The translations under genes were made by a program, and so were the position numbers. The notes beneath the pieces were generated by a model. That model searched no databases. It was not told the origin of the DNA and saw only the letters and a list, made by a program, of their open reading frames with translations. This document shows positions 487 through 40,935 of a stretch of 64,000 bases of DNA, in pieces (positions within the stretch are counted from its first letter, which is position 1; each line of letters begins with the position of its first letter). Where the stretch lies: the IMG/VR virus record IMGVR_UViG_3300013233_000235, positions 124,001 to 188,000 of that record. The stretch is one strand, 5' to 3'.

Positions 487-594
487 GGGCCCCAACTATG
501 GGGGCTTTCTTTTTTATTTGTTTCCATACATTCTCAAGACTATATAACTTGTATGAAGAGACACTTTGATCTCTTATAGTGAAAGGGTTTAATT
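487..594 (+). promoter_or_regulatory. Early cassette, class I: terminator + TATATAACT (541-549) + ATG 553 + hairpin AAGAGA-CACTTTGA-TCTCTT (556-575) + SD
   Basis: Near-identical to nine other intergenic copies. Confidence 0.85.
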
Positions 595-978
595 ATGAAT
601 GAAGAAATCACAGACGTGCTAGTGGCGCTATTAGGCACACTACGTGGCAAGCAACTGGTATTTAAAGCCGCCCCCCCGGACGATTTGCCAGAGACCCACG
701 ACGCGATGGGTGCAAACCCGGCATTCCAATTAACACTTCCCGGAGAGTTGTACGTAGCACTCCACCCAAAACGGTCCCCGGGGTCAGAGGGCTATGACTA
801 CGCGGTGGTATGGGATCGCATATCCGGTGATGATGATTGGCGGCGATGTGGGTCACTGTTGTTAAAAGAGGCCCCTGGGGTGGGAATCATATTTGGTGGC
901 CACTTGCTGATGGACGTGCCCCACAAAGTATCTGGCGATGGCCCGCAGAGACTCACACTTGTGGAGTTATCCCGATGA
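595..978 (+). CDS. hypothetical early protein
   Basis: First ORF after the cassette; ATGA overlap with the next gene. Confidence 0.8.
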   Translation: MNEEITDVLVALLGTLRGKQLVFKAAPPDDLPETHDAMGANPAFQLTLPGELYVALHPKRSPGSEGYDYAVVWDRISGDDDWRRCGSLLLKEAPGVGIIFGGHLLMDVPHKVSGDGPQRLTLVELSR

Positions 979-1574
979 AGGGTGGTACAGGGGATGCCTA
1001 CGAGGGGCGGTGGTTCGAACTCTCGACCCTGCGCCACCTAGTTAAAGCCTTTAAAGATAAAGGTATAACAGTGGCTTCATTGGGCTGGGCTGATACAGAG
1101 GGCAGTCTAAACCCTGATTTCGCATGTATGGCATCACCGATAGAATCCCCATGTGGTAAGATCACCACCGAGTCTCTGGAGTGGATATTGAGCAATACCA
1201 TCACCATGCGGTGCGATCGCGGGTTCGGCTCACAAGCCCATATTTGCACACAGCACGATGGGAAGTCACACATACTCAATTATGAGACGGATGGGCTCCG
1301 TACAGCCCGGCGGATATTTATGGATGACAGCACCGTTCTCGACTGCGCAAGATCTGGGGATGGTAGGCTATGGGTTATAACCCGCCGTGGGTTGTACAAG
1401 TTCTTACCAGATACATTTGGGTGGGGCAATGTGGGCACCCTAGTCGGAGAAGAATTCCCAGTATGTTGGGATATGGTTTCCTCGATGACGCCTACAGAAA
1501 CAGGTGTATCCGTTACGGGTTTCTCGGAGCTCATTGGTTGCGCCGGAGTACGTGTCAGCGCATCTGGCGAATAA
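975..1574 (+). CDS. hypothetical beta-rich protein (paralog family B)
   Basis: Start moved to ATG 975 (ATGA overlap); carries WVITRRGLY motif shared with 28734 and 31850. Confidence 0.7.
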   Translation: MKGGTGDAYEGRWFELSTLRHLVKAFKDKGITVASLGWADTEGSLNPDFACMASPIESPCGKITTESLEWILSNTITMRCDRGFGSQAHICTQHDGKSHILNYETDGLRTARRIFMDDSTVLDCARSGDGRLWVITRRGLYKFLPDTFGWGNVGTLVGEEFPVCWDMVSSMTPTETGVSVTGFSELIGCAGVRVSASGE

Positions 1575-1580
1575 TAAGTT

Positions 1581-1679
1581 AGCCCTTCGGGGCTTTCTTT
1601 TTTATTTGTTTCCATACATTCTTAGAACTATATAACTTGTATGAAGAGACACTTTGATCTCTTGTATAGGAGTTTAGTT
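1581..1679 (+). promoter_or_regulatory. Early cassette, class I (TATATAACT 1629-1637, ATG 1641, loop CACTTTGA)
   Basis: Repeat copy; UUCG-loop terminator, AGGAGT SD. Confidence 0.85.
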
Positions 1680-2486
1680 ATGAGCATACTTGATAAATAC
1701 TTAGGCAAAGCCTTGACGTGCCGCCGATCCACCTTAGTGGAATTCGATGCCAGAGTGCCGTATTACAGAGAATACGCACTGCCTAACGGGCAGGTGGTGT
1801 TTACGCATATTGTCGTAAACAGGGGGCCCAACGAGCTGGGTCACGGGGTTATACTCGGAGGGGCGGGCGGTGATATCATTAAGACGTTAGAAGAAAGTGA
1901 TGACCCTATCATCATGGCGGCTGTCGCCGCACCAACAGAAGGGTTGGATGTCATAATGTTTCGCCGGTATGTGATAGTAACTTTGCCAGGGGCCGTTGCC
2001 GAGCTATCAAAACTATTCTGTGAATACACAGACCCTGATGAGCTCAGTGTGGACCTGACCCCCATGGTAGTGGAATACCACGAGCTGCCACCGGTGTTAG
2101 CTAAGTACCACCCCAACAGTGTGCCAGGTAATACGTTTGAAAGGTACGCACATGGCAACTCATCCGGAGAAGAGCTGTACCTTATTGAAAACCCCGAAAG
2201 CGGTATGCGGGCCTTTGGGGTATACTCACAGGAACAAGGTAAATGGGTGGTGACAGAGGTGGCCCAAACACCTGGTGTGGAAGTCGACCCTATGGCGCAT
2301 GATGAGTGGTTCACCATCGGCCCAATCATGTTTAGACGTGATACACCACTGGGCGTACTAACAGCCACATGGAAAAAGTCTGAACTGGGGGTGTTAATCA
2401 AGCCCAACGGGTATGTGGAGCCAGCCACTGGTGATGATGCGCCAGTTGGCAAGTGCCCCGATGGTAACATGTTGACACGTATGTAA
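1680..2486 (+). CDS. hypothetical early protein
   Basis: SD-led ATG at 1680; the track start 1641 is the cassette ATG. Confidence 0.8.
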   Translation: MSILDKYLGKALTCRRSTLVEFDARVPYYREYALPNGQVVFTHIVVNRGPNELGHGVILGGAGGDIIKTLEESDDPIIMAAVAAPTEGLDVIMFRRYVIVTLPGAVAELSKLFCEYTDPDELSVDLTPMVVEYHELPPVLAKYHPNSVPGNTFERYAHGNSSGEELYLIENPESGMRAFGVYSQEQGKWVVTEVAQTPGVEVDPMAHDEWFTIGPIMFRRDTPLGVLTATWKKSELGVLIKPNGYVEPATGDDAPVGKCPDGNMLTRM

Positions 2487-2492
2487 TTAGTT

Positions 2493-2597
2493 AGCCCCGA
2501 TTAAGGGGCTATCTTTTTTATTTGTTTCACCCATGTGTAAGAACTATATAACTACTATGAAGAGGCACTTTGATCTCTTATGTTGAAGGATGTTGAT
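2493..2597 (+). promoter_or_regulatory. Early cassette, class I (TATATAACT 2545-2553, ATG 2557, stem AAGAGG/TCTCTT with G-U, loop CACTTTGA)
   Basis: Repeat copy. Confidence 0.85.
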
Positions 2598-3107
2598 ATG
2601 ACAATCATTGTAACAACAGTGGATAAAAAGGTGATAACTATGACAGGCGACGGCCGTGGGAGTCTGAGACAGATGGTGGTATCAGACCACTGTGTAAAGG
2701 TGCACCGCCACCATGATAGATTATACGGTTTCGCTGGATCTACGCAGGAGATAGACCAAGCCTTAAAGGTGTTACCATTTATACCGGACGGCGCTGCACC
2801 CGAGACTGTGGAAATGTTTTTGTCGCGGATATTGCAGGATAGCACGTGCATCACGGCAGCCTGGGTCAATGACAAACCCAGACTAGATAGATTCGGGCAT
2901 GGTAAAGCCCACCGCATCACCGACCGCGTGGATTTCTTGGGATCTGGAAGTCGTATGGGTATAGACCTGTTCACACCGACCCGGCTTCTCCACGACTGCA
3001 CTGCGGCAGAGGCGGCTGTAATTACTGTTAACACCGTGGGGCTTATACACAGCTCGTGCGGGGGTAGCACAACCACGGTACGCGTGGCACGGGAGGTTGC
3101 CAAATGA
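2598..3107 (+). CDS. HslV/proteasome-beta-like Ntn peptidase
   Basis: N-terminal M-T-I-I-V, DGR, VKV, FAGS, GSGS and C-terminal SSCGG motifs; GAAGGA SD before ATG 2598. Confidence 0.65.
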   Translation: MTIIVTTVDKKVITMTGDGRGSLRQMVVSDHCVKVHRHHDRLYGFAGSTQEIDQALKVLPFIPDGAAPETVEMFLSRILQDSTCITAAWVNDKPRLDRFGHGKAHRITDRVDFLGSGSRMGIDLFTPTRLLHDCTAAEAAVITVNTVGLIHSSCGGSTTTVRVAREVAK

Positions 3108-3712
3108 GGATGATAATCACCGATAACAGTGGTAACGGGGTTATAAAAATGGGCAGTCTAATAAAGACCGCTCCAACACACCCGATCGATCTGCCTGAAG
3201 ACATTATTAATGCAGATGGTGATGTTGAAGCCTATGGGGTTATCAGCTATGGTACAGGGTTAGCGTTAGAAGGCCTGTTGTCCGCACCTATCTCCGACAT
3301 CGATATAAAGGCCCTACCGGCTCCGGTGGAAACACATGACTGCTTTATCATGCATGGTCGGGATCGCACAGACCCACCAACCATGGTGTACAAGTTCCCT
3401 GGTAGCCGTGTCCACCATAGTCGCCTGGTTAGAAGGGGGGTTGCTATATACGGGGATGACCCGGATATTAGGTACCTGCGTAACATGGCCGTCATGGCCA
3501 CGAACCAAGTCACAGCACCTGGTAAGAATAAACCCACATTTGATGAGTGGTTGGGTATAGCGGCTATGTTTACATCCCGTGGTAGATATGGGGCCAACGT
3601 CATACATCGTGATGGTGGTGAGGTAACAGAGCTGTATTACTCAGATGCTTACTTACGTATAAAGGCCAACGAACTTATACTACGATCTGGTCTAAAGCCG
3701 ATCCTAGTATAG
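3104..3712 (+). CDS. hypothetical protein, possibly a degenerate Ntn-fold paralog
   Basis: ATGA-coupled to the HslV-like gene; weak motif resemblance only. Confidence 0.6.
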   Translation: MRMIITDNSGNGVIKMGSLIKTAPTHPIDLPEDIINADGDVEAYGVISYGTGLALEGLLSAPISDIDIKALPAPVETHDCFIMHGRDRTDPPTMVYKFPGSRVHHSRLVRRGVAIYGDDPDIRYLRNMAVMATNQVTAPGKNKPTFDEWLGIAAMFTSRGRYGANVIHRDGGEVTELYYSDAYLRIKANELILRSGLKPILV

Positions 3713-3721
3713 CAGCATAAG

Positions 3722-3854
3722 TAGACCCCCCGATTAAGGGGGTCTATTCTTTTTATGTAAATCTGGAATCAAGCATATCTCAATGACATATAACTAAAAT
3801 GGATATAGGCGTTTTGACTTATATCACTATGGCTTAACAGCCAGGAGTTTTACT
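3722..3854 (+). promoter_or_regulatory. Early cassette, class II: terminator + CATATAACT (3787-3795) + ATG 3799 + hairpin GATATAGG-CGTTTTGA-CTTATATC (3802-3825) + AGGAG SD
   Basis: Near-identical to 40335-40467. Confidence 0.85.
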
Positions 3855-4172
3855 ATGAACATGTCCAAATTTGCTGGAAAAATGTACAGCGTAGCACCAG
3901 TGGATACCAACTCTTTACCACCCATGGTGGCAGATGCGGCAGCCAAGGCTGCAAGCATCGTAGAGCTGAAATGCGTAAGCCAGTCTTTGGACACCCCACT
4001 ATACGCTGTACACAGTGGTGACAGCGTCGAACTATTCTACCAAGGTTCTAACGAGATATTCTCGTTAGAACCACGCACCCCCAACGGTGATAATACCATA
4101 CGTTGGTGCATAGATGCACCATACGGCTTCCTCGTGTATGGGGATGGCCGTATAGTCATCCTGAAAGCATAG
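3855..4172 (+). CDS. small hypothetical early protein
   Basis: SD-led ORF after the class II cassette. Confidence 0.75.
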   Translation: MNMSKFAGKMYSVAPVDTNSLPPMVADAAAKAASIVELKCVSQSLDTPLYAVHSGDSVELFYQGSNEIFSLEPRTPNGDNTIRWCIDAPYGFLVYGDGRIVILKA

Positions 4173-4175
4173 AAT

Positions 4176-4210
4176 ATACACGGGTAGGGCACTTCGCCCT
4201 ACCCGTGTAT
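4176..4210. terminator. bidirectional intrinsic terminator
   Basis: ATACACGGGTAGGGC/GCCCTACCCGTGTAT inverted repeat between convergent genes. Confidence 0.8.
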
Positions 4211-4234
4211 TCACATATTTTCTTTTTTTCTTTA

Positions 4235-5815: not shown

Positions 5816-5858
5816 TACTTATTATCTCTCGGTAATCCATTATTGTGGGGGGTGTGTA

Positions 5859-5981: not shown

Positions 5982-6124
5982 GTCCGTATTCCTGTAAGTT
6001 GGTCTATTCGATTAGGGGTGACAAGAAAAATAATGCTTACACTATGTATCACCCCCTACCACCCCTAGCGGATGTAGAAGAAAAATAATAATGATATGAC
6101 CCCATTAGTAATGAGCGAATAGCT

Positions 6125-8774: not shown

Positions 8775-8794
8775 GTTGTAAGATAGCTGATAAA

Positions 8795-8821
8795 TAAGAG
8801 GAGGGTTTTGCCCTCCTCTTA
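8795..8821 (+). terminator. intrinsic terminator after MCP
   Basis: TAAGAGGAGGG-TTTTG-CCCTCCTCTTA hairpin. Confidence 0.75.
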
Positions 8822-8837
8822 TGCCGTAATCGGGCAA

Positions 8838-8887
8838 ATGTCAGAACTATATAACTACTATGAATACACCTATAGGAGTTTTTTAGG
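8838..8887 (+). promoter_or_regulatory. Early-type promoter without the hairpin (TATATAACT 8848-8856, ATG 8860)
   Basis: 27 nt identical to the 39581 copy, but no CNNNUUGA stem-loop follows. Confidence 0.8.
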
Positions 8888-10228
8888 ATGATTATCACAC
8901 GGAAATCGTGGTATGGTTACCCCGATTCAGACGGTATGGATTATTACCGTAAAGTTAAAAACAACACCGGCATGCGCATACGCATATCGGATGTATCCGG
9001 ACGTGTGCGGGTACATGACAGTGACGTTGGCATAACCGATAATCCCCATTCCAGAGAAGTGGTCATCGAGGAGTTCTTCGCTGAGGGTACTGCCAAGTTC
9101 ATGGAGCACATATCCAAAGAGGATACTGAGCTGTATGGGGCCGGCACCGGGGTGGTTTTAACCACCATCGTTAAGCTTGACCTGATTAGGGAGGTTACCA
9201 AAGGGGTATACATCCGCGAGTTGGATTTGCACATAACCAAATCCGAGGGCCAAGTATACCGTGGGCATCCCAAATTTAACACCACTATTCGTGGCACTCA
9301 GCCGGCTAACGCGGTAGGGACCATGATAGAGCTGCTAGACCCTAGAAGTAGGTATACGACTATGTATGCCAACATCTCTGGGGAAGTGTACCTCGTGCAC
9401 CCAACCCGGTACCCAACGCCGGAAGTCGAGGGTGTGCGCATCACCTGCCACAACGGTAATAACCACGCACCAGACACTCATACGAGTGACGTAAAAGAGT
9501 TCACCACAGGTGATGGGGTGAATGGTATCCGGCTATATAGGGATATCGAGGAAGCGCGGGTTGATGCACGCGGTGACAAAGCCGTGGCTGTGAACGAGAG
9601 TATAGCCACTGCCAACAAGCTTATCGCTGAGAAGAATGCTGAATTCGCTAAGCGTGAGCAGAGCATTGCAGCGGCAAAATTGGCGGACAGTCGTGAAGCC
9701 GATTTGACCAAAGAGGCAATTAAGCGAGACCGGTCAGCGCTGGAAGTGCGTGAGCAGAATATACTTAACAAGCTGCATGAGCAGGAGAGCCGCGAGAAAG
9801 ATCGTAGAGCTGCTGCGGAAGCCACATTCATAAAACAACAGGAGGCTATAGATGAAAAACGAAAGGCTGAGTTAGACAAACGGCTTAAAGAGCTGAGGGC
9901 TACTGCGGATACCCACATACGGGACCTCACCAGTAGGATAAAAACGCTTGAAGGTAACATCGTTACCCTTAAGGCACAACACGCCAGGGATCTGGTAGAG
10001 GCGCGAAAAACCGCCAAGGAAGCAGCCGCTAAGGAGGAGGCTCAGCGATCAGCTGACCGAATTGAACGCGAGCAGGCTAAACGCAAGTCAGCAGAAGAAA
10101 AGGAACACACTGCTAAGGAAAGCAGTCGTAGCGTAGCATCAGCCTCTAATAAAGAGGGCTGGGGTACTATGACAAAGGTGTTGACATTCGGCGTAGCGGC
10201 ACTCGGCTTATGGCGGGTACTAGCGTAA
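8888..10228 (+). CDS. coiled-coil protein with C-terminal membrane anchor
   Basis: Long E/K/A/R-rich helical half; hydrophobic tail VLTFGVAALGLWRVLA. Confidence 0.8.
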   Translation: MIITRKSWYGYPDSDGMDYYRKVKNNTGMRIRISDVSGRVRVHDSDVGITDNPHSREVVIEEFFAEGTAKFMEHISKEDTELYGAGTGVVLTTIVKLDLIREVTKGVYIRELDLHITKSEGQVYRGHPKFNTTIRGTQPANAVGTMIELLDPRSRYTTMYANISGEVYLVHPTRYPTPEVEGVRITCHNGNNHAPDTHTSDVKEFTTGDGVNGIRLYRDIEEARVDARGDKAVAVNESIATANKLIAEKNAEFAKREQSIAAAKLADSREADLTKEAIKRDRSALEVREQNILNKLHEQESREKDRRAAAEATFIKQQEAIDEKRKAELDKRLKELRATADTHIRDLTSRIKTLEGNIVTLKAQHARDLVEARKTAKEAAAKEEAQRSADRIEREQAKRKSAEEKEHTAKESSRSVASASNKEGWGTMTKVLTFGVAALGLWRVLA

Positions 10229-11899: not shown

Positions 11900-11901
11900 C
11901 A

Positions 11902-24550: not shown

Positions 24551-25068
24551 GTAAGTCATTAGCGTTTAGCATGAAAGAGTTACTACCATTTAAAATGGGC
24601 GAGCTTAAACTTAACCGATTGAACCGGTTGACCATGGACGGCCACCGTATGCCGGGATGTGAGTCGGGGTTCTTTGGTAAAGGTAGCATCAGTTGGGTAG
24701 ACGGGTCTAATCGCCGAATCATCAGCTATACCAACCCTCGGTACGCGGCGTTTAGACTTGATGGGCAGAATATCGTAATGCTACAGGGTGAGTACCAGTA
24801 CCCCGATGGTCGTATCGCCGCAAGTTTGTATTACAATCTTGATGGCAAGTTCAAATCACTGGGGCGTTACCACCGTGGCTGTGTTGGGCCATACCTAGTG
24901 TTTAGAGACCGGCTGGTTAACACCACAAGCGGCGAAGTGGCATTCCCCGGTCGGACTGTTGTAAAGGTATCCATGCCCGGTGATGCCGGCGTGATAAGGG
25001 TTGCATTTGAAAATAACCCTACCAGAGATTTCACTGTAAACAGGGCTGGCGAGTTAGTTCCTCAATAG
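24547..25068 (+). CDS. hypothetical protein (paralog family A)
   Basis: ATGA-coupled; DG..hP...G.I.W.DG motif. Confidence 0.7.
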   Translation: MSKSLAFSMKELLPFKMGELKLNRLNRLTMDGHRMPGCESGFFGKGSISWVDGSNRRIISYTNPRYAAFRLDGQNIVMLQGEYQYPDGRIAASLYYNLDGKFKSLGRYHRGCVGPYLVFRDRLVNTTSGEVAFPGRTVVKVSMPGDAGVIRVAFENNPTRDFTVNRAGELVPQ

Positions 25069-25180
25069 CAGTATAAAGACGGCCCCGAAGGCCACCCATA
25101 CCCACCGGGCTATTATAAGTCGGGTGTGGCATACAAGGGTGCCCGATAAACATGGGTACCAACTAAAGGATGTTTGTATT

Positions 25181-25759
25181 ATGAAGTTGTATCACTATTC
25201 CGCTAATTCACACGATGTGCTTAAATCTTTATATGCACAGGCCAAACTTACTGACAAAGAAGCTGAGCGCGCGAATGCCTGGGCAGTAGAAAGTCAGGCA
25301 GTCGGGCCCTACCATAAGCATATCGCATTGTTTTTTGAGAAAGTACCCTTGGACGAGCTTGGGGATATCTACGGCGACTACCATGAGATCTGGTACCACG
25401 GTAATGAGATTTACGAACACACCGTGTCTACGGAAGATATGGCCGATCGACCATACGTGATTACTGAAACCGAAACCCACAGGGCCACCATTGGTGAGTT
25501 GTGGGATGATGACTATGCACATCGTGGTAAGTATTACACCACCCTAAATAAAAGGCAGCAGGATAATAATGAGCGTGGGCATACCATGTCCGCCATGGTT
25601 AAAGCTGCAAAACCTTTTGTCGGTGGCACGCGGGCCGCCTTCGAGGCCAACCGTGGCAAAGAAGATTTGTTGTACGCAGCCAATGTGCCGCACCTTATGT
25701 ACTACGCGGGTGCGTTTGAGATACCTGTTCGTAAGATTGAGAAGGTGACTGTAAAATAG
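25181..25759 (+). CDS. conserved hypothetical phage protein (N-terminal LYHYS)
   Basis: AAAGGA SD; 192 aa. Confidence 0.75.
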   Translation: MKLYHYSANSHDVLKSLYAQAKLTDKEAERANAWAVESQAVGPYHKHIALFFEKVPLDELGDIYGDYHEIWYHGNEIYEHTVSTEDMADRPYVITETETHRATIGELWDDDYAHRGKYYTTLNKRQQDNNERGHTMSAMVKAAKPFVGGTRAAFEANRGKEDLLYAANVPHLMYYAGAFEIPVRKIEKVTVK

Positions 25760-25771
25760 CAGTAATAAGTC

Positions 25772-25872
25772 AGCCCCTTCGGGGGCTTTCTTTTTTATTT
25801 GTTTCCATACATTTTCAGAACCATATAACTACTATGAAGAGGCATCTTGATCTCTTACATTGGAGTTTAGTT
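25772..25872 (+). promoter_or_regulatory. Early cassette, class I (CATATAACT 25822-25830, ATG 25834, stem AAGAGG/TCTCTT, loop CATCTTGA)
   Basis: Repeat copy. Confidence 0.85.
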
Positions 25873-26481
25873 ATGAATGACTTATTAATGCGCTTAGTTG
25901 TCACCAGTGGTGTTAAGCTGAGATGTGACCACCGGGTGGTTGCGGTATCGCCCGATCGAGCCTGTACGTGGGCGGCGATACTAACCATTGGGGCTGAACA
26001 CCCCATCCTCCCAACCATGGGTGGTTGGGATAATGTCCACGCCGTCCCACTAGCCACACCCGGTCGGGGGGTGCTAAACGACAACGATGCCACCCGACGG
26101 TTTACCCAGGCGATCGTAGATGGGGTCGGGCGTGGGCACGGGCTTCTATCAGACCGTACACGTGCCATACAGGGCCTCAACATGGGTGTGAGACTGCCGG
26201 AGTTGTTTGAGGGATACATGTGGTCAAAACTGGCCACAAGACATGGGCTGGGTAACAGCCGGGCACTTTTTTACGCTGCATACGGGCTGTGCGAGCGGCA
26301 GGGCGACTGGTGGGAGGTACTGACCCACATGGAAGAGTACCAGCGTAGCGCACGCCAGCTTGTTGGGTTGGCTGGTGTGCGTACAGGGGGGGATCACGGG
26401 CTACTGTATATGAACAGTCGCCCGGAGTTACGAGATGCTGCATTGGACACACTCATCGAGTATGTAAGGGGGGTGAAATGA
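25873..26481 (+). CDS. hypothetical early protein
   Basis: SD-led ATG after the cassette. Confidence 0.75.
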   Translation: MNDLLMRLVVTSGVKLRCDHRVVAVSPDRACTWAAILTIGAEHPILPTMGGWDNVHAVPLATPGRGVLNDNDATRRFTQAIVDGVGRGHGLLSDRTRAIQGLNMGVRLPELFEGYMWSKLATRHGLGNSRALFYAAYGLCERQGDWWEVLTHMEEYQRSARQLVGLAGVRTGGDHGLLYMNSRPELRDAALDTLIEYVRGVK

Positions 26482-28633: not shown

Positions 28634-28733
28634 GCCCCCTCGGGGGCTTTCTTTTTTATTTGTTTCCATACATTTTCAGAACTATATAACTTGTATGAAG
28701 AGACATCTTGATCTCTTGTATAGGAGTTTAGTT
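28634..28733 (+). promoter_or_regulatory. Early cassette, class I (TATATAACT 28683-28691, ATG 28695, loop CATCTTGA)
   Basis: Repeat copy. Confidence 0.85.
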
Positions 28734-29471
28734 ATGAGTAAAATGGTTAACTCGCTTAAGAAGGTGCCCAATACACCACGCAATTTCATGCACGAGGGGC
28801 GCCTTAGAAACCTCTTGGTACATATGCGGGAGTCGGACCCATCCGCTATTACGCCAGAGAACATGTTCGTCATGGCGGACATCCCGGTAGATTTTACCCG
28901 GCTGGCTTTACCCGAGATCCACGCCAGTGGTGCGACCCAGCCGATTTCTATCGCCGCCCTGACACGTCTTATCAACGGTGTCCAAATTGGCCGCATACGG
29001 TCGACAGATGGGTCGTTTGTGGTGGCTGCCTTTCCTAGATGGTATGATTCGGGCGCTGGTGCTATTAGCGTCGCCATATGTGTGGAAGGGGCGACAAATT
29101 CGGCTCTGGATATTAACATTATACATGGTCGGCGTATACTCCATGTTGCATGTGGGCATAAGCGGGCGTGGATAATCACGGATCTGGGTGCATGGCTTGT
29201 AGGCTGGGATGTCGATAGCCAGGGATCTGTACATATCCAGGAAGGGGCGGTACCACTCGGCGATGGGGGCCCATTGTACAACACTCGCATCCAGATGATC
29301 TATAATGCGGATGTGGATGAAGATAACAATCTTACATACACGGCCGTATGCTATAATGGGGGGGAACCAACCGCTGCATACGAGGTCTGCGTATCCCCGA
29401 TGACAGGTCAACACGATGCACCGTCCGATATGAGTGTGTCCGAATTGATGGACACACTTAAAACAAACTAA
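28734..29471 (+). CDS. hypothetical early protein (paralog family B)
   Basis: SD-led ATG; AWIITDLGAWL motif. Confidence 0.75.
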   Translation: MSKMVNSLKKVPNTPRNFMHEGRLRNLLVHMRESDPSAITPENMFVMADIPVDFTRLALPEIHASGATQPISIAALTRLINGVQIGRIRSTDGSFVVAAFPRWYDSGAGAISVAICVEGATNSALDINIIHGRRILHVACGHKRAWIITDLGAWLVGWDVDSQGSVHIQEGAVPLGDGGPLYNTRIQMIYNADVDEDNNLTYTAVCYNGGEPTAAYEVCVSPMTGQHDAPSDMSVSELMDTLKTN

Positions 29472-29886: not shown

Positions 29887-29892
29887 TAAGTC

Positions 29893-29995
29893 AGCCCCTT
29901 CGGGGGCTTTCCTTTTTATTTGTTTCCATCAATTCTTAGAACTATATAACTTGTATGAAGAGACACTTTGATCTCTTATTGTGAAGGATGTTGAT
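29893..29995 (+). promoter_or_regulatory. Early cassette, class I (TATATAACT 29943-29951, ATG 29955, loop CACTTTGA)
   Basis: Repeat copy; SD segment GAAGGATGTTGATATG identical to the 2557 copy. Confidence 0.85.
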
Positions 29996-30088
29996 ATGAG
30001 TAAAGTATGTAAGAACCCCACAGGCCCAAATGGCCGGGTTAGTTACGGACTCGCCCACGGTACCACCCTCTCCAACGAGCCACACTAG
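29996..30088 (+). CDS. 30-aa micro-protein MSKVCKNPTGPNGRVSYGLAHGTTLSNEPH
   Basis: Occupies the first-gene slot of a cassette with a full SD; manual translation. Confidence 0.55.
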   Translation: MSKVCKNPTGPNGRVSYGLAHGTTLSNEPH

Positions 30089-30101
30089 GGATAAAGGCGC
30101 A

Positions 30102-30731
30102 ATGACCAACCATAGGGTTAGCCCCAACTACACACCCCCAGCAACCCCGCTAGGCGATTATCTGCGTGCCGTCATGGCGCACCAGGATATAACCTGGAGG
30201 GGACTTTCCAATCGCGTGGGATGTACACCCATCTCATTGGCCGCCATCGCATCAGGTGAATCCCGCTTTCCGGATGTATCCCAAGAAAACCTTCTGATGT
30301 ATTGTAAACACGTTTACAAAGATAGGTTTTGTAAGGATGCTTGGCGCAGAGCTATGTCCGGCATACCAACGGGTAATAAGGAGGTGCACGCAGCAATGGC
30401 CACCCCTTTGGGGGACGCTATGCGGGAGTTCCGCCGAGAGCATGGGATCACCTATAGCCAGTTCGCCCGCATGTGTGGTATCAATCACACGTACCTGCGG
30501 TCAATCGAGCGTGGTAAAGTGAAACTTAGCTTTGCCAACGGCGTTTATATATCAAAAGGTATACGCGCCAATGGGGACCTAGATGTGGCAGCGACACGCC
30601 TACTTGATTTGGTGTCTAGCACCATGGTGCAACCCACTTACACGGATATGGCTATTAGAATATCCGCCCTTAATGAAACCAAACAACGCAGGCTTTCTGA
30701 CCTGCTACTTAAGTTGGAGACAGAGAAATGA
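30102..30731 (+). CDS. tandem double XRE-HTH protein
   Basis: Two TPLGD..R...H.IT...L/F.R..G.....L..I.SG/RG repeats. Confidence 0.75.
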   Translation: MTNHRVSPNYTPPATPLGDYLRAVMAHQDITWRGLSNRVGCTPISLAAIASGESRFPDVSQENLLMYCKHVYKDRFCKDAWRRAMSGIPTGNKEVHAAMATPLGDAMREFRREHGITYSQFARMCGINHTYLRSIERGKVKLSFANGVYISKGIRANGDLDVAATRLLDLVSSTMVQPTYTDMAIRISALNETKQRRLSDLLLKLETEK

Positions 30732-31481: not shown

Positions 31482-31488
31482 ATGCACA

Positions 31489-31728: not shown

Positions 31729-31742
31729 ATTGCGGCATAACA

Positions 31743-31849
31743 AGACTCCCTTAATCGGGAGTCTTTCTTTTTTATTTGTTTCCATACATTCTTAAGACTA
31801 TATAACTTGTATGAAGAGACGCATTGATCTCTTGTATAGGAGTTTAGTT
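31743..31849 (+). promoter_or_regulatory. Early cassette, class I (TATATAACT 31799-31807, ATG 31811, loop CGCATTGA)
   Basis: Repeat copy. Confidence 0.85.
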
Positions 31850-32392
31850 ATGAACGAAGAATTATCTAAAGCGTGTGCATCCATAGCGGATACCCCGCAG
31901 TTGGAATTGACATTTGATGTCAACCGCATTAGCGGTATGCCCGATGGGACAAGTGCCAATATCTTGTCACGATTGTTGGGTGTTCCGCTATCATTCCTAA
32001 CTGCGGTTGCCGGGGTGAGTTGCAAGAAAGCCGCTCTGGCGAATATTTGCACAGCAGTAACACGCCCCGGCCTATCGGTGGTATACGCCGTACGGGGCGG
32101 TACACTGCATGTACAATTCTTGGTTGCTGGGGAGTACGAGCATCTACGGATAGATGCCCCTGAGGATCCCATTCTAGGCATGGGGGTGTCGGGGTTAACC
32201 GCATGGGTGGTTACCACACAGGGTGTCTACAAACACCAGTTGAATGACTTCGAGCCCCCGCAAGTGTTTACATACCCTATAACGGGTATAACGGGCATGG
32301 CGGTAAGTGGTACGGGGATCATCATTGATGTCTTGCTGCCCGACGGTGTTGAGCGATCAATGCATCTGCGTGTGGAGGCCGATAGTGAATAA
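31850..32392 (+). CDS. hypothetical early protein (paralog family B)
   Basis: AWVVTTQGVYK motif. Confidence 0.75.
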   Translation: MNEELSKACASIADTPQLELTFDVNRISGMPDGTSANILSRLLGVPLSFLTAVAGVSCKKAALANICTAVTRPGLSVVYAVRGGTLHVQFLVAGEYEHLRIDAPEDPILGMGVSGLTAWVVTTQGVYKHQLNDFEPPQVFTYPITGITGMAVSGTGIIIDVLLPDGVERSMHLRVEADSE

Positions 32393-34389: not shown

Positions 34390-34448
34390 CAAACAAATCT
34401 GGGTATACTACCCTAACTAACGCCGCAGATGCGGCAAGGATATTGACT

Positions 34449-35737: not shown

Positions 35738-35757
35738 TTAACCCCCAGAATAAAGTT

Positions 35758-35856
35758 AGCCCTTCGGGGCTTTCTTTTTTATTTGTTTCCCTATATTCTT
35801 AGAACTATATAACTTGTATGAAGAGACACTTTGATCTCTTGTATAGGAGTTTAGTT
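35758..35856 (+). promoter_or_regulatory. Early cassette, class I (TATATAACT 35806-35814, ATG 35818, loop CACTTTGA)
   Basis: Repeat copy. Confidence 0.85.
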
Positions 35857-36444
35857 ATGAGCGATTTTCTGACACACAGGTGTCACATGTTAAGTACACG
35901 CACCACCACCGGGGGGTCCGAGATGACCACCATCGACGGCCTTGATCTACCACGGGCGGTTAACGTAGGCGGGCATATTGAGTTGAAGAGAGGGGGTGTT
36001 ACATATCGCACTGATAAGCATCCGCCTTGGAAGCCCTTTACAGTGTTGTCAAGCTCGGGACGCCACGCCAACGGGGTATTGTTGGAAATGCACTGCGGGT
36101 GCGATGGCACATACCCGTATGTCCTGTTTATCGATGGTCGGTGCCACGTACTAGGTAAACATTTTGGTGACATCCCAGAGAATGGTTGCGTGTTTGAACA
36201 GGGTCTCTGGATGTACGGCCATGGTCTTCTAGACTACCATGAGTCTGTGGTTATAGCCATCGGTGAGTACACCGGCACCAAACCTAAGCGGCAGCTCAAC
36301 TACAAGGTAATTGCAATGGATACCCCCAAACAAGAGTTCGTAATAGAGATTATACCCAATGCTGAAAATAGCATTGTGTATCAATTGCGGGTAACCCTGC
36401 CAGCGTGGGGTCCCCGCGCACAAGTGATACAACGCGTTAAGTAA
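35857..36444 (+). CDS. hypothetical early protein (paralog family A)
   Basis: SD-led; TIDGLDLP...GGHIEL motif. Confidence 0.75.
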   Translation: MSDFLTHRCHMLSTRTTTGGSEMTTIDGLDLPRAVNVGGHIELKRGGVTYRTDKHPPWKPFTVLSSSGRHANGVLLEMHCGCDGTYPYVLFIDGRCHVLGKHFGDIPENGCVFEQGLWMYGHGLLDYHESVVIAIGEYTGTKPKRQLNYKVIAMDTPKQEFVIEIIPNAENSIVYQLRVTLPAWGPRAQVIQRVK

Positions 36445-36475
36445 TACACACACGGTATATACCAGGAGCTTAATT

Positions 36476-37485: not shown

Positions 37486-37491
37486 TTAGTT

Positions 37492-37590
37492 AGCCCTTCG
37501 GGGCTTTCTTTTTTATTTGCTTCCCTATATTCTTAAGCCTATATAACTTGTATGAAGAGACGCATTGATCTCTTGTATAGGAGTTTAGTT
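37492..37590 (+). promoter_or_regulatory. Early cassette, class I (TATATAACT 37540-37548, ATG 37552, loop CGCATTGA)
   Basis: Repeat copy. Confidence 0.85.
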
Positions 37591-39522
37591 ATGAGTGAAA
37601 GATATATCAGAGATCTGAGCCTTAAGTTACAGAGGTGGACAGATGCGTATGCAAGTGGCACCCCACTTGTGTCAGATAGTTTATACGATGCCGTCCATAA
37701 GGAGTTGGACAAAGCGGTCGGCGGATCGGCTGAGAAGTTCGTACCGCAGACCCTGACAGTGGCCACCACTGGTAAGCACCGCGTCCCCATGACCACTCTC
37801 AAAGATGTTTACACGATTGAGGATATTGGCAGATTCGTGAATGGTTTTCCAGAGGGTACCCGCTTTATAGCGGAGCCAAAGATGGATGGGATGGCTATCA
37901 GCCTAACATATGAAAACGGCGATCTGGTCAAAGGGTTAACCCGGGGTGATTATGTTAATGGGGAGCTCTGTACTGAATCCATCAGCTACGTCCCAAGCGT
38001 GCCTATAACACTCGGTCTGGATATCGATATGGAGGTTCGGGGTGAGCTTGTTGTTACCCACGAAAGCTTTACACCAGACATGGGTGTATCGCCACGCAAC
38101 TTTGCCGCAGGCAGCCTTATGAAGGGGGACCAAGAGCGGAACAAGCATCTAACGTTCATCCCATACGCTGTGACAGTGGCGCGCGGTGAATACGGGGAGT
38201 TAACAAGTCTGCACGACAAACTCATGTGGCTGGGGACCATCGGGTTCCAAACCAATCCGGCCAAGATACTGCTGGGCACCCGCGTACAAATCATCGATTG
38301 GATGAAGGATATGCATGAAAGTTGTGACCCGCAGGCACGGCCAGAAGCTTACATGTGCGCGATTGATGGGTTAGTGCTAAAGGTCGATGACTCTGAGCTG
38401 TTTGCCGACGCTGGTGGTACCAGCAAGCACCCCCACGGGGCGATCGCCTTTAAGTACAACTCAGCTAGCGCTGTCACCACGATCGTGGCTGTGGAGGAGT
38501 CTATGGGCCGCTTTGGCGAGATAACTCCAGTGGCTATCGTGGAGCCTGTGACCATCGATGGTAATGTGGTTACCCGTGCCACCCTCCACAACTACGCCAA
38601 GGTTCTAAGCAAGGGTGTATTCATTGGTGGGGAATGCGTACTGATGCGGGCAGGTGGTGTGATACCGGACCTGGTTGCTATGACGGAGAATGTTGACAAG
38701 TTGCCAATCGTATCCCCGCCATCTGTATGCCCAAGCTGTGGTGCCGCAACAATCGTCACCGCCGACCTTATCAACACCACCTGTAGTAGAGAAGACTGGT
38801 CGGAATGTAAGGCGCGTGCGGTGCGTACTGGGGCATACATCGTGTCTAAGAAGGTGCTAAATATACAGGGGCTTGGTGGAAAGACTATCGAGAAGTTGTA
38901 TGACCTTGGTGTCAAGTTAACCACCTTGCACCATGTGCTGACACTTTCCAAGGATGATCTGGTAAAGGCCGCAGGTAACGCTATGGGGAAAAAGGTATAT
39001 GACCGCATCCAGTCGGCGGCTGAGATGTCATGCCAAACATTCATAAAGGCCATGTGCATAAAGGAAATCGGCAACCATGCATCCGTTATATTGTCCGAGC
39101 ATGTGGGTCACCACCCCCAGGGTTTTCTCGACTTATCGGGGGAATCTATCGGGCTTATCAATGGTTTAGCCGAAGATGAAGTTGGGCATTTGGTGGAATT
39201 CTTTGGCGATACCGCGAGGCAAGCGGCGGCATGGCGTGGTCATGATCTGGTGACAGACCCTATGTCGCCTGAAGATGACCCCGCTAATAAAAACGCTGAT
39301 GAGTTGGTAGCTAGGTTCAGCAACGCTGGATTCGATACGTCTCACAAGGTGTGTGTAACCGGATCGTTTGAGGGTTGTAACCGCGATGATATTCACAAGG
39401 CCCTAAGCAACGCTGGGTTCACACCCACGAAATCAGCCAGTGCGAATACCGCCCTAATAGCCGGCGATAAACCGTCGGCATCAAAGGTGGATAAATCGGG
39501 CGCGATGTTCTGTGCGTTTTAA
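37591..39522 (+). CDS. ligA: NAD+-dependent DNA ligase
   Basis: EPKMDG, TRGD...GE, EVRGE, PRNFAAGSL, DGLVLK, AIAFKY, RATLHN, CPSC zinc finger, HhH, C-terminal BRCT (CVTGSF). Confidence 0.95.
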   Translation: MSERYIRDLSLKLQRWTDAYASGTPLVSDSLYDAVHKELDKAVGGSAEKFVPQTLTVATTGKHRVPMTTLKDVYTIEDIGRFVNGFPEGTRFIAEPKMDGMAISLTYENGDLVKGLTRGDYVNGELCTESISYVPSVPITLGLDIDMEVRGELVVTHESFTPDMGVSPRNFAAGSLMKGDQERNKHLTFIPYAVTVARGEYGELTSLHDKLMWLGTIGFQTNPAKILLGTRVQIIDWMKDMHESCDPQARPEAYMCAIDGLVLKVDDSELFADAGGTSKHPHGAIAFKYNSASAVTTIVAVEESMGRFGEITPVAIVEPVTIDGNVVTRATLHNYAKVLSKGVFIGGECVLMRAGGVIPDLVAMTENVDKLPIVSPPSVCPSCGAATIVTADLINTTCSREDWSECKARAVRTGAYIVSKKVLNIQGLGGKTIEKLYDLGVKLTTLHHVLTLSKDDLVKAAGNAMGKKVYDRIQSAAEMSCQTFIKAMCIKEIGNHASVILSEHVGHHPQGFLDLSGESIGLINGLAEDEVGHLVEFFGDTARQAAAWRGHDLVTDPMSPEDDPANKNADELVARFSNAGFDTSHKVCVTGSFEGCNRDDIHKALSNAGFTPTKSASANTALIAGDKPSASKVDKSGAMFCAF

Positions 39523-39538
39523 ATAGCAGTATAAAGTC

Positions 39539-39641
39539 AGCCCCGATTAAGGGGCTTTCTTTTTTATTTGTTTCGCCCATATGTCAGAACTATATAACTA
39601 CTATGAAGAGACACTTTGATCTCTTACTTTGGAGTTTAGTT
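39539..39641 (+). promoter_or_regulatory. Early cassette, class I (TATATAACT 39591-39599, ATG 39603, loop CACTTTGA)
   Basis: Repeat copy. Confidence 0.85.
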
Positions 39642-40325
39642 ATGAGTAAAGTAAACGTAGATGTAACCCCCGCGATGGTAGAAACCTCATTAGCGGTATG
39701 CCTGTCCCGGAATGGTGGTACCAGTGTGCGGGAGTTTGTCGAAAAGACCAGCGCCTACTGGAAAGCCATCTTGACTGAAGAGGCTGGGGAGGTGCTGTGC
39801 GAATTGGGCATAAAGCCCTGGAAACCTCTTAAGAAGGTGAACGCACTGCTGGAATGCGCAGACTTGTATTACACGTTACTGGCTGCCGCACACCAGCCCG
39901 GCTCGGGGGTAGGTAACGTGTACGAATCCGTGGCAGATTGGATGTCGGCACCACCGCGCGATGACATCCCCGAGGGGTTGGTTGACAAAGGCCTCACGCT
40001 GGTACACGTGGCGTCAGATCCGATGAGTACGGTCGCCGACAAGTTGGGGGAGACCGCCATGATAATGGTGGCGATCCTCAAACAGTTGGGGTACTCCCCC
40101 GCCGACATGCTTGGGGCGTTCAAATGGAAGAACGCATTGGTAGAACGACGGTACGAGTTTACACCGACAACTGATGGGAAGGTCGTTATCTACAACAGCG
40201 GGGTGATGTCCGATGATACCGCGCTGGGCCACATCATCCGTGAGCGGGATCTCGCGATGGATCTCCATAAACCATACATGGAGATGTGCGGGGAGATCCG
40301 CAACCGTCTGGCACCTGTAAAATAG
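39642..40325 (+). CDS. MazG-like / dimeric dUTPase-like NTP pyrophosphohydrolase
   Basis: EEAGE...KPWK...LECADLYY motif. Confidence 0.7.
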   Translation: MSKVNVDVTPAMVETSLAVCLSRNGGTSVREFVEKTSAYWKAILTEEAGEVLCELGIKPWKPLKKVNALLECADLYYTLLAAAHQPGSGVGNVYESVADWMSAPPRDDIPEGLVDKGLTLVHVASDPMSTVADKLGETAMIMVAILKQLGYSPADMLGAFKWKNALVERRYEFTPTTDGKVVIYNSGVMSDDTALGHIIRERDLAMDLHKPYMEMCGEIRNRLAPVK

Positions 40326-40334
40326 CAGCATAAG

Positions 40335-40467
40335 TAGACCCCCTATTAAGGGGTCTATTCTTTTTATGTAAATCTGGAATCAACGTATTTTCAATGACAT
40401 ATAACTAAAATGGATATAGGCGTTTTGACTTATATCTATTAATGGCTTAACAGCCAGGAGTTTTACT
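40335..40467 (+). promoter_or_regulatory. Early cassette, class II (CATATAACT 40398-40406, ATG 40410, hairpin GATATAGG-CGTTTTGA-CTTATATC 40413-40436)
   Basis: Near-identical to 3722-3854. Confidence 0.85.
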
Positions 40468-40809
40468 ATGACAAATCTAAAAGCGTTAGTAGTGTTCACA
40501 AATCAGTCATCCACCTATCCAGGTGTAAGCCGGTTGGTACACAAGGCGTTAGATGGGTACAATGTTGGAGTTATGAGTATCGGTACCGTGGACCTGGAAA
40601 ACAATGCGGAGGATAGAGCAATGATGGTACAACTGTTGCAGAGAAAGCAGCACGAATACAATCGGGTTGTTTACATCGATGGGGGGGATGGGAAGGCTTC
40701 TCATACCGTAGCATCCCACGCAGGTGCGTGGGATATGGTAATCCACGTGAATGCAGACAAAGTGGTAACAGGTTGCAGTAGATCATGGGGTGAGGATATC
40801 ACCCTATAA
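40468..40809 (+). CDS. small alpha/beta hypothetical protein
   Basis: AGGAG SD; alternating strand/helix pattern. Confidence 0.75.
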   Translation: MTNLKALVVFTNQSSTYPGVSRLVHKALDGYNVGVMSIGTVDLENNAEDRAMMVQLLQRKQHEYNRVVYIDGGDGKASHTVASHAGAWDMVIHVNADKVVTGCSRSWGEDITL

Positions 40810-40813
40810 AGTC

Positions 40814-40935
40814 AGCCCCTTCGGGGGCTTTCTTTTTTATTTGTTTCCATACATTTTCAGAACTATATAACTTGTATGATAGAATAACCACATCACCTAT
40901 TGACCACTATACTCTGGGTAACAAAAGGATGCTGT
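40814..40935 (+). promoter_or_regulatory. Early cassette with class I promoter but no stem-loop (TATATAACT 40864-40872, ATG 40876)
   Basis: Upstream part identical to class I; leader unrelated. Confidence 0.8.

What the first reader, a model, noticed from the sequence alone, without database searches (positions are those of the whole stretch)
553..40887. Invariant ATG at the predicted 5' end: a shared 13-aa N-terminal tag or a micro-uORF on every early transcript
Seen: in seven copies the ATG is in frame with the downstream gene and would add MKR(H/R)(F/L/I)DLL(Y/H/L)(R/W)SLV. In the other seven it opens a uORF that stops before the SD-led start: MKRHFDLL*, MKRHFDLLC*, MKRHFDLLL*, MDIGVLTYITMA*, MDIGVLTYIY*, MNTPIGVF*, MIE*. 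None overlaps the main start out of frame. Several class I changes are synonymous or conservative. Established: 5'-terminal AUGs support leaderless 70S initiation and can modulate downstream SD-led genes in E. coli. Inference: possible dual initiation (tagged and untagged isoforms) or ribosome loading that melts the hairpin. The simpler alternative is that ATG is only an initiator element for the RNAP, and the seven in-frame copies are not independent.
Basis: partly seen in the sequence, partly recalled or inferred. Interest (0 to 1): 0.6.

Follow-up and report, generated by a model that had tools for sequence, protein, structure and literature searches.

The report
Jumbo-phage early promoter start-site motif
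The invariant ATG is most likely the last three bases (-2, -1, +1) of a phiKZ-type early promoter repeated about 31 times in an uncultured jumbo phage, not a start codon, so the shared "tag" and micro-uORFs are by-products of a conserved promoter and 5' hairpin cassette.

Summary
All 14 copies, their ATGs, the seven in-frame readings and the seven short ORFs are as described. The whole 204-kb genome has 31 copies, all on the + strand.

The window belongs to a phiKZ-like jumbo phage with a PhiKZ-type capsid protein and two beta'-like RNA polymerase genes. The element is a module: terminator, T-rich tract, the box TATATAAC, six bases, then G.

This is the same register as early promoters elsewhere in the family:
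- phiKZ: TATATTAC-N5-TG
- 201phi2-1: TATATTAC-N4-GTG
- Vibrio phage Yong: box-N5-(T/C)G
- AR9: box-(6N)-G, where that G is the mapped +1

So the G of the ATG aligns with the transcription start, and A and T with -2 and -1. The AUG is then probably not in the RNA.

Only G is invariant (31/31). One copy has GCG. A 34%-identity relative has the same box followed by gTG, tTG or gTA.

Coding tests fail:
- Every open in-frame copy is the same 39-nt cassette.
- One such cassette carries TAG.
- All three 42-nt cassettes are closed by stops.
- Codon 9 is Y/H/L/S/P/stop.
- Class II encodes an unrelated peptide.

What is conserved is a hairpin starting at +2, with covarying stems and a shared loop. No transcript 5' ends were available for this phage.

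The parts
510..597 (+). Class I module. Promoter -45 to +1 with box at 542-549, ATG at 553-555 (G555 = proposed +1), hairpin at 556-575, SD-led start at 595. The ATG frame stops after 8 codons.
1598..1682 (+). Class I module. Box 1630-1637, ATG 1641-1643, hairpin 1644-1663, SD-led start 1680. 39-nt cassette, ATG frame open.
2514..2600 (+). Class I module. Box 2546-2553, ATG 2557-2559, hairpin 2560-2579 (5' arm ends in G, giving a G.U pair), SD-led start 2598. 41-nt spacing, frame closed.
3756..3857 (+). Class II module. Box 3788-3795, ATG 3799-3801, 8-bp hairpin 3802-3825 with a different stem but the same loop, a second small hairpin just before the SD, start at 3855. Unrelated 12-codon frame, closed.
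8817..8890 (+). Single-copy module directly after the capsid gene. Box 8849-8856, ATG 8860-8862, no hairpin, 28-nt leader, start at 8888. 8-codon frame, closed.
25791..25875 (+). Class I module. Box 25823-25830, ATG 25834-25836, hairpin 25837-25856 (G.U variant), start 25873. 39-nt cassette, open.
28652..28736 (+). Class I module. Box 28684-28691, ATG 28695-28697, hairpin 28698-28717, start 28734. 39-nt cassette, open.
29912..29998 (+). Class I module. Box 29944-29951, ATG 29955-29957, hairpin 29958-29977. The SD-led ATG at 29996 opens only a 30-codon ORF. 41-nt spacing, frame closed.
31768..31852 (+). Class I module. Box 31800-31807, ATG 31811-31813, hairpin 31814-31833, start 31850. 39-nt cassette, open.
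35775..35859 (+). Class I module. Box 35807-35814, ATG 35818-35820, hairpin 35821-35840, start 35857. 39-nt cassette, open.
37509..37593 (+). Class I module in front of the NAD-dependent DNA ligase gene. Box 37541-37548, ATG 37552-37554, hairpin 37555-37574, start 37591. 39-nt cassette, open.
39560..39644 (+). Class I module. Box 39592-39599, ATG 39603-39605, hairpin 39606-39625, start 39642. 39-nt cassette, open.
40367..40470 (+). Class II module. Box 40399-40406, ATG 40410-12, hairpin 40413-40436 (in this copy the stem can extend over the ATG), start 40468. 10-codon frame, closed.
40833..40938 (+). Module with a class I promoter but an unrelated leader. Box 40865-40872, ATG 40876-40878, no 5' hairpin, start 40936. 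3-codon frame, closed, although 60 nt is in frame by distance.

Best explanation
Each copy is a terminator, early-promoter and 5'-leader module of a phiKZ-like jumbo phage. It is read by the phage's own multisubunit (virion) RNA polymerase.

The promoter runs from about -45 to +1: a T-rich tract, the box TATATAAC at -14 to -7, and a start-site element A(-2) T(-1) G(+1). The 'invariant ATG' is that start-site element. Transcription most likely begins at the G, so the RNA starts pppG followed at +2 by a short stem-loop, then a free Shine-Dalgarno sequence and the real start codon 28-60 nt downstream.

The apparent 13-residue tag and the micro-ORFs are what the hairpin arms, the loop and the SD spell when read from a triplet that is probably not transcribed as AUG.

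Shown here: the architecture, the register shared with mapped promoters of relatives, the lack of any coding signature, and covariation in the hairpin.

Inferred: the start at G in this phage, recognition of A-T-G by the polymerase (by analogy with the T-A-T-G pocket of the phiKZ non-virion enzyme), and a role of the 5'-terminal hairpin in protecting or marking early mRNAs.
For: Identity of the genome:
- The capsid protein hits Pfam PhiKZ_MCP at 5e-107.
- The genome has a beta-like gene, a phiKZ gp55 homologue and two beta'-like catalytic-domain matches, one over and one under the Pfam cut-off.
- It is a 204-kb IMG/VR record with terminal repeats.

Copies:
- 31 copies, all on the + strand. None lies in the structural-gene block on the - strand.
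- Most of the copies scanned in detail follow an intrinsic terminator.

Register with relatives:
- phiKZ: the box TATATTAC is followed by N5 then T (28/33) and G (25/33) or A (5/33).
- 201phi2-1: box, N4, then GTG in 21 of 23 forward-strand matches and ATG in 2.
- Vibrio phage Yong: box, N5, then mostly T/C followed by G.
- AR9: box-(6N)-G(+1), mapped by dRNA-seq and primer extension. The same paper states that phiKZ and phiR1-37 have a conserved start 6 nt downstream of the box (PMC5312081).
- The review PMC7598289 places the AT-rich box at about -10.
- In this phage the box is followed by exactly six bases and then the G.

Conservation in this phage:
- G(+1) is 31/31; A(-2) and T(-1) are 30/31. 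The exception, GCG, keeps pyrimidine-G.
- The nearest relative found (capsid 34% identical, syntenic) has the same box followed by gTG, tTG or gTA, so no ATG.

Precedent for a start-site element:
- The phiKZ late promoter is T(-3)A(-2)T(-1)G(+1). All four bases are required in vitro (PMC4666361).
- They are bound in the non-template strand by a pocket of the beta-like subunit (PMC12809450).
- Position -2 is highly conserved in 201phi2-1 early promoters (PMC11512511).

No coding signature:
- 39-nt cassette: 14 copies, 13 open and 1 with TAG.
- 42-nt cassette: 3 copies, all closed.
- Class II encodes an unrelated peptide.
- The codon after LL is hypervariable.

Hairpin:
- 27 promoter-coupled copies against 1-2 elsewhere, with 0.9 expected.
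- 100% of cells paired and 3 of 5 pairs with double changes; slid controls give 36-76%.
- The non-Watson-Crick pairs are G.U when read on the + strand.
Against: - The start at G rests on homology of register.
- A(-2) is also a purine preceded by T in class I, so some initiation at A cannot be excluded.
- The primary phiKZ mapping paper was not readable. ONT-cappable-seq start sites in 201phi2-1 are only good to about 2 nt.
- Near-invariance of A(-2) is stronger than in phiKZ, where -2 varies. This needs a lineage-specific explanation.
- The class I hairpin is thermodynamically weak: -5.2 kcal/mol, z = -1.2. In some copies an alternative fold pairing its 3' arm with the SD is equally stable.
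- Many copies are recent duplicates, so their conservation is not independent.
Confidence: 0.75

Rival explanations
1. Transcription starts at the A, so every early mRNA carries a 5'-terminal AUG that loads 70S ribosomes without a leader. This would give a 13-residue N-terminal extension on the 39-nt cassette genes and short ORFs elsewhere, and translation through the hairpin would modulate the SD-led start.
For: - ATG is present in 30 of 31 copies, including copies with unrelated leaders.
- A(-2) is a purine preceded by T in class I, so initiation there is chemically plausible.
- 13 genes would be extended in frame.
- The hairpin is weak enough (-5 to -7 kcal/mol) for a ribosome to open.
- From general knowledge, a 5'-terminal AUG suffices for leaderless initiation in E. 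coli.
Against: - The family register puts +1 on the G.
- The GCG copy and the relative's gTG, tTG and gTA show that a start codon is not required.
- All open frames are one cassette type. One of the 14 has TAG, and the three 42-nt cassettes are closed.
- Class II spells a different peptide, and codon 9 is Y/H/L/S/P/stop.
- Variable sites are not enriched at third codon positions.
- Every gene has its own strong SD-led start.
- No leaderless transcripts were found in phiKZ by dRNA-seq (PMC8244752).
Confidence: 0.1
2. The ATG has no function of its own. It is carried along because the modules are recent duplicates, or are homogenised by recombination, so invariance reflects shared descent only.
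For: - Class I copies are 65-98% identical over 110 nt.
- Identical leaders recur, and even the first codons of the downstream genes repeat.
Against: - The three bases just upstream of the ATG vary (TGT, ACT, AAT, AAA, ACC, AGA), while A-T-G stays at 30-31 of 31.
- Copies with unrelated upstream and downstream sequence still keep it: class II, window 8860, window 40876, genome 44019 and genome 62741.
- The T-G at this spacing is conserved across distantly related phages.
Confidence: 0.1
3. The elements are host sigma-70 promoters (-10 TATAAC), or the inverted repeat after the ATG is a DNA operator for a phage repressor rather than an RNA hairpin.
For: - TATAAC at -12 to -7 fits sigma-70 geometry. 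That geometry would also place +1 on the G.
- An inverted repeat at +2 to +21 is a classical operator position.
- An HTH protein is encoded by an early-type gene at 30030-30731.
Against: - The sigma-70 consensus scan does not flag the elements, and there is no usable -35 at 16-18 bp.
- Conservation extends over positions that sigma-70 does not read.
- phiKZ-like phages transcribe independently of host polymerase (PMC4666361, PMC7598289).
- The three stem classes differ in sequence yet stay complementary, with G.U pairs on one strand only. This fits RNA pairing, not a protein-read operator.
Confidence: 0.04

Closest known systems
phiKZ early (virion RNA polymerase) promoters
   Same: - The AT-rich box is identical in 7 of 8 bases (TATATAAC against TATATTAC).
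- There is a T-rich tract upstream, and T-G lies exactly six and seven bases after the box.
- There are tens of copies, nearly all on one strand, often just after an intrinsic terminator.
- Leaders are about 30-40 nt (PMC8244752, PMC7598289).
   Different: - Here -2 is almost fixed as A. In phiKZ it varies.
- Most leaders here begin with a conserved stem-loop, which I did not see in phiKZ leaders.
- The start site is not mapped here.
phiKZ late promoter T(-3)A(-2)T(-1)G(+1), read by the non-virion polymerase
   Same: - Class I copies carry TATG at the equivalent place.
- It shows that a start-site-overlapping motif ending in the +1 G can be a sequence-specific polymerase contact (PMC4666361, PMC12809450).
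   Different: - Late promoters have no upstream box.
- Class II copies here have AATG.
- Which polymerase reads the modules is inferred, not shown.
AR9 and 201phi2-1 early promoters
   Same: - AR9 has box-(6N)-G(+1).
- 201phi2-1 has the box, then N4, then GTG, with -2 conserved. This is the same register.
   Different: - The triplet is GTG in 201phi2-1 and NNG in AR9.
- AR9 DNA contains uracil.
5'-terminal stem-loop mRNA stabilisers (E. coli ompA leader; the phage T7 late leader)
   Same: A short hairpin lies within one to three nucleotides of the predicted 5' end, followed by an accessible SD.
   Different: - The effect on half-life is untested.
- The loop sequence is conserved across stem classes, which simple end protection does not require.
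- The comparison rests on general knowledge, not on a tool result.
Leaderless mRNAs and regulatory leader peptides
   Same: If transcription began at the A, an AUG would sit at the very 5' end.
   Different: - Every gene has its own SD-led start.
- The peptide is not conserved between classes.
- Stops fall at varied places, and there is no overlap or coupling with the main start.

Membership tests
phiKZ-type early (virion RNAP) promoter | Highly conserved AT-rich box of about 8-10 nt centred near -10 | tested here: met
   TATATAAC occupies -14 to -7 relative to the G in all 31 copies. It matches the phiKZ box in 7 of 8 bases.
phiKZ-type early (virion RNAP) promoter | Conserved start site six bases downstream of the box (pyrimidine -1, G +1) | tested here: inconclusive
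   The sequence register is met: T(-1) in 30/31, C in 1/31, G in 31/31. It is the same as in phiKZ, 201phi2-1, Yong and AR9. The actual 5' end was not measured.
phiKZ-type early (virion RNAP) promoter | Many copies, strand-biased, in front of operons of small genes of unknown function and absent from virion-gene blocks | tested here: met
   There are 31 copies on the + strand and none on the - strand. Downstream genes are mostly without family hits. The - strand block at 47-62 kb encodes virion proteins.
phiKZ-type early (virion RNAP) promoter | Genome encodes two sets of split beta/beta'-like RNA polymerase subunits | tested here: inconclusive
   Found: one beta-like ORF, a gp55 homologue and two beta'-like catalytic-domain matches. 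The full two sets were not enumerated, and chimallin was not detected by the one search made.
phiKZ-type early (virion RNAP) promoter | Early transcription independent of host polymerase and of protein synthesis | not testable with these tools
   This needs infection experiments. The phage is an uncultured IMG/VR record.
Leaderless mRNA (5'-terminal AUG) | Transcription starts on the A of the AUG | not testable with these tools
The comparative register points to G instead.
Leaderless mRNA (5'-terminal AUG) | The 5' AUG opens the gene's reading frame and no SD-led start is needed | tested here: not met
   18 of 31 frames stop within 3-13 codons. All copies have an SD-led start 28-95 nt downstream.
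Regulatory uORF / leader peptide | Conserved peptide, or conserved stop position relative to the main start | tested here: not met
   Peptides differ between classes. Stops come after 3, 5, 8, 9, 10 or 12 codons, and none overlaps the main start.
5'-terminal stabilising stem-loop | Base-paired stem within a few nucleotides of the 5' end, maintained by compensatory change | tested here: met
   Three stem classes share a loop. 100% of cells are paired and 3 of 5 pairs show double changes. 27 copies start at +2. Two further copies have unrelated hairpins, at +1 and +5.
5'-terminal stabilising stem-loop | Raises mRNA half-life | not testable with these tools
   This needs decay measurements with stem-disrupting and stem-restoring mutants.

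The most novel reading that the evidence does not exclude
All early mRNAs of this phage carry a common 5' label: the first base or bases, followed by a stem-loop whose loop C-R-Y-N-U-U-G-A is kept while the stems have been wholly replaced. A phage or host factor reads this label. Possible roles are sorting or exporting early transcripts, recruiting ribosomes, or shielding the 5' end. A minority of transcripts starting at the A could add a 5'-terminal AUG that loads 70S ribosomes onto this label.
Probability: 0.15. Interest if true: 0.6.

Novelty: new member of a known kind. Interest (0 to 1): 0.25.

Why it matters
It removes a tempting but probably false coding annotation. Thirteen genes in this genome should start at the SD-led ATG, not 39 nt upstream.

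It gives a full early-promoter model (-45 to +1) for an uncultured jumbo phage that has no close sequenced relative.

It also shows that the start-site triplet of these promoters is lineage-specific across the family: ATG here, GTG in 201phi2-1, NTG in phiKZ, and (T/C)G in Yong. This fits the recent structural finding that a beta-like subunit pocket reads the bases at the start site.

The promoter-coupled hairpin with a conserved loop is a small, testable new feature of early-mRNA design.

Tried and rejected
I therefore did not use read laying, and no 5' ends could be examined.
- Close relatives.
  - An exact promoter-plus-hairpin pattern found nothing in metagenome or genome contigs.
  - A shorter pattern in viral contigs gave seven single, coding-region chance hits in unrelated contigs.
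  - A capsid-based locus search in viral contigs found nothing.
  - Megablast against phages found nothing.
  - The word-based protein search gave one relative at 34% identity, which was used.
- Rfam gave no family match in the window.
- Host sigma-70 promoters: the scan does not flag the modules.
- The primary phiKZ transcription paper and the supplementary start-site tables are not held, so the phiKZ register was taken from the genome itself plus statements in later papers.
- The one-mismatch hit at 6620 was rejected as coding sequence.
- Energy alone does not support the class I hairpin (z = -1.2). Its support is comparative.
- MAFFT did not gap the 3' arm to match the 5' arm, so only the inner five pairs were counted formally.
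- Only genetic code 11 was used.


Full report
**What the window is.** The window is bases 124001-188000 of a single 204,041-bp virus record with direct terminal repeats.
- The 720-residue product of 6612-8774 matches Pfam PhiKZ_MCP at 5e-107. Its best named relatives are jumbo phages at 24-27% identity.
- The genome also encodes a beta-like RNA polymerase ORF, a homologue of phiKZ gp55 and two beta'-like catalytic-domain matches, one over and one under the Pfam cut-off.
- It is therefore a divergent, uncultured phiKZ-like jumbo phage of the kind that brings its own multisubunit RNA polymerase.
- The - strand block at 47-62 kb encodes virion proteins.
- The + strand genes behind the repeated element are mostly small and without family hits. 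Exceptions are an NAD-dependent ligase, an HTH protein and an HslV-like peptidase.

**Observation check.** The pattern ATATAACT-NNN-ATG occurs 14 times exactly, all on the + strand.
- The copies belong to a larger repeat of about 110 nt.
- Its parts, in order, are an intrinsic terminator, a T-rich tract, the box, three variable bases, ATG, an inverted repeat, an SD and the gene start.

**The rest of the genome.** Scanning all 204 kb gives 31 promoter-like copies on the + strand and none on the - strand. I numbered positions from the G of the triplet as +1.
- G(+1) is present in 31 of 31 copies. A(-2) and T(-1) are present in 30 of 31.
- Other fixed positions are at -19, -23 and -32.
- The three bases before the triplet vary freely.
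- The exception is at genome 83177, in front of the 703-residue beta-like polymerase ORF. It reads GCG: still pyrimidine then G, but not a start codon.

**Where transcription most likely starts.** I compared the element with promoters whose starts have been mapped.
- AR9: the early consensus is box-(6N)-G(+1), from dRNA-seq and primer extension. The same paper says phiKZ and phiR1-37 have a conserved start six bases downstream of their boxes (PMC5312081).
- The review PMC7598289 places the AT-rich box at about -10.
- phiKZ: in the genome itself, TATATTAC is followed by five variable bases, then T in 28 of 33 and G in 25 of 33 or A in 5 of 33.
- 201phi2-1: the same box is followed by four variable bases and then GTG in 21 of 23 forward-strand matches, ATG in the other two. 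This agrees with the published remark that -2 is highly conserved there but variable in phiKZ (PMC11512511).
- Vibrio phage Yong: the promoter-like copies mostly have the box, five bases, then T or C followed by G.
- Nearest relative found: a Logan contig with a syntenic helicase-capsid region and a capsid 34% identical. It has the very same box, TATATAAC, followed by gTG, tTG or gTA.
- In the present phage the box is followed by exactly six bases and then the G.

The family-wide element is therefore T/C at -1 and G at +1. The base at -2 is lineage-specific: A here, G in 201phi2-1, any base in phiKZ. Read this way, the 'ATG' is -2, -1 and +1, and the RNA begins with G.

There is a direct precedent for a start-site-overlapping motif.
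- The phiKZ late promoter is T(-3)A(-2)T(-1)G(+1), and all four bases are needed in vitro (PMC4666361).
- Those bases are held in the non-template strand by a pocket of the beta-like subunit (PMC12809450).
- Class I copies here carry TATG.

**Is anything translated from the triplet?** The sequence gives no sign of it.
- By distance to the SD-led start, the class I leaders fall into three cassettes.
  - 39 nt: 14 copies, of which 13 are open and one (genome 202254) carries TAG.
  - 42 nt: three copies, in frame by distance but all closed by stops.
  - 41 nt: four copies, out of frame.
- Class II (56 or 58 nt) spells an unrelated 10-12 residue peptide.
- The single-copy leaders (28, 36, 60, 74 and 95 nt) are all closed.
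- Four of about ten spacing types are multiples of three, which is what chance gives, and only one of the four is open.
- Within the 39-nt cassette the conserved 'residues' are exactly the hairpin arms and the SD.
- The only freely varying codon reads Y, H, L, S, P or stop, and the next reads R or W.
- The F/L/I/V series is simply NTT.
- Variable sites are not concentrated at third codon positions.
- Every gene has a strong SD seven to eight bases before its own ATG.
- phiKZ dRNA-seq found leaders of 31-40 nt and no leaderless transcripts (PMC8244752).

**What is conserved after the start.** It is a hairpin, not a peptide.
- Class I has a 6-bp stem, class II an 8-bp stem of quite different sequence, and the GCG copy a third 5-bp stem.
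- All three enclose the same loop, C-R-Y-N-T-T-G-A/T.
- On an alignment of 27 copies, the five inner pairs are paired in 100% of cells. Three of the five pairs show changes on both sides. Sliding the partner by one to three columns drops pairing to 36-76%.
- The non-Watson-Crick pairs are G.U when read on the + strand, which points to RNA rather than a duplex operator.
- A genome scan for stem-loop-stem with this loop finds 27 copies. All begin at the base after the triplet. One or two lie elsewhere, with 0.9 expected.
- Two further copies with unrelated leaders have other hairpins, at +1 and +5. Only the copies at 8860 and 40876 lack one.

Limits on the hairpin evidence:
- Stability is modest: -5.2 kcal/mol (z = -1.2) for class I and -6.9 (z = -4.8) for class II.
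- In class I copies with the CGCATTGA loop, a fold pairing the 3' arm with the SD is as stable as the 5' hairpin.
- Rfam has no matching family.

**Most likely mechanism.** The injected virion polymerase recognises the T-rich tract, the box and the A-T-G start-site element, and starts at G.
- The nascent RNA folds a stem-loop one base from its 5' end.
- By analogy with 5'-terminal stem-loops known to slow 5'-end-dependent decay in E. coli (general knowledge, not tested here), this would stabilise or mark early mRNAs.
- The SD stays free for ordinary initiation.
- The conserved loop suggests something more specific than end protection, but I cannot say what.

**Rivals.**
- Leaderless reading. 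It survives only if a substantial share of transcripts start at the A. Nothing here excludes a minority doing so.
- Pure hitch-hiking by duplication. This is unlikely, because the bases next to the triplet vary and copies with unrelated flanks keep it.
- Host sigma-70 promoters. The consensus scan does not flag the modules, and there is no usable -35.

**Novelty and limits.** This is a new member of a known kind: early promoters of phiKZ-like phages.
- It has two features not described for the characterised relatives: near-fixation of A at -2, and a promoter-coupled 5' hairpin with a conserved loop.
- The central inference, a start at G, is comparative.
- The phage has no close sequenced relative, so all conservation within the lineage comes from paralogous copies in one genome.

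Noticed in passing
genome 83177-83230 (outside the window; locus L043): The only promoter copy without ATG (it has GCG) sits in front of a 703-residue ORF with an RNA_pol_Rpb2_6 match. It has its own 5-bp hairpin with the shared loop. A polymerase subunit gene may therefore have a deliberately different start-site element.
   Followed up: partly
window 1663-1680, 31833-31850 and other 39-nt cassettes: The 3' arm of the class I hairpin (TCTCTT) is also complementary to the SD (AGGAG). In copies with the CGCATTGA loop, the fold that hides the SD is as stable as the 5' hairpin (-5.5 against -5.2 kcal/mol). This could be a small translational switch, or nothing.
   Followed up: partly
window 3826-3850 and 40437-40463: Class II leaders carry a second small hairpin (GGCT-TAAC-AGCC) directly against the SD. 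It is identical in all class II copies.
   Followed up: no
window 29996-30731: The SD-led ATG behind the promoter at 29955 opens only a 30-codon ORF. A 233-residue HTH-domain ORF (30030-30731) follows in another frame and overlaps it. This could be a small early gene, a frameshift or an assembly error.
   Followed up: partly
SD-led starts at window 595, 28734, 29996, 31850, 39642 and genome-wide: The first three or four codons of unrelated early genes repeat (ATGAGTAAAG..., ATGAACGAAGAA...). The repeated cassette, or selection for A-rich early codons, therefore extends into the coding region.
   Followed up: no
window 25745-25779, 39512-39546, 40311-40345, 25064-25088, 3709-3730: A conserved 25-33 nt block (…AATAGCAGTATAAAGTCAGCCCC…) precedes several terminators, so the repeated module also includes the 3' end of the upstream transcription unit.
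   Followed up: no
window 20154-20279: Three tandem 42-bp units, two of them identical, lie inside the 813-residue virion structural protein gene (17847-20288). They encode an acidic, Gly/Pro-rich repeat.
   Followed up: no
window 6043-6064 (also 34769, 36947): A TATG followed by a C-rich stretch lies in the divergent region upstream of the 166-residue ORF and capsid operon. It might be a late-type TATG start site, but the two related copies lie inside ORFs and may be chance.
   Followed up: no
loci L052 and L053 (Logan contigs of SRR12358676 and SRR12358675): This is the only relative found. It has 35% G+C against 50% here, and a syntenic helicase / 166-residue ORF / capsid region. It uses the same TATATAAC or TATATTAC box with T-G or T-A six bases on.
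   Followed up: partly
genome 44019-44100 (locus L036): A class II-type promoter is followed by two strong hairpins (leader folding energy -24 kcal/mol) and a 57-codon ORF. This could be a structured small RNA rather than an mRNA leader.
   Followed up: no
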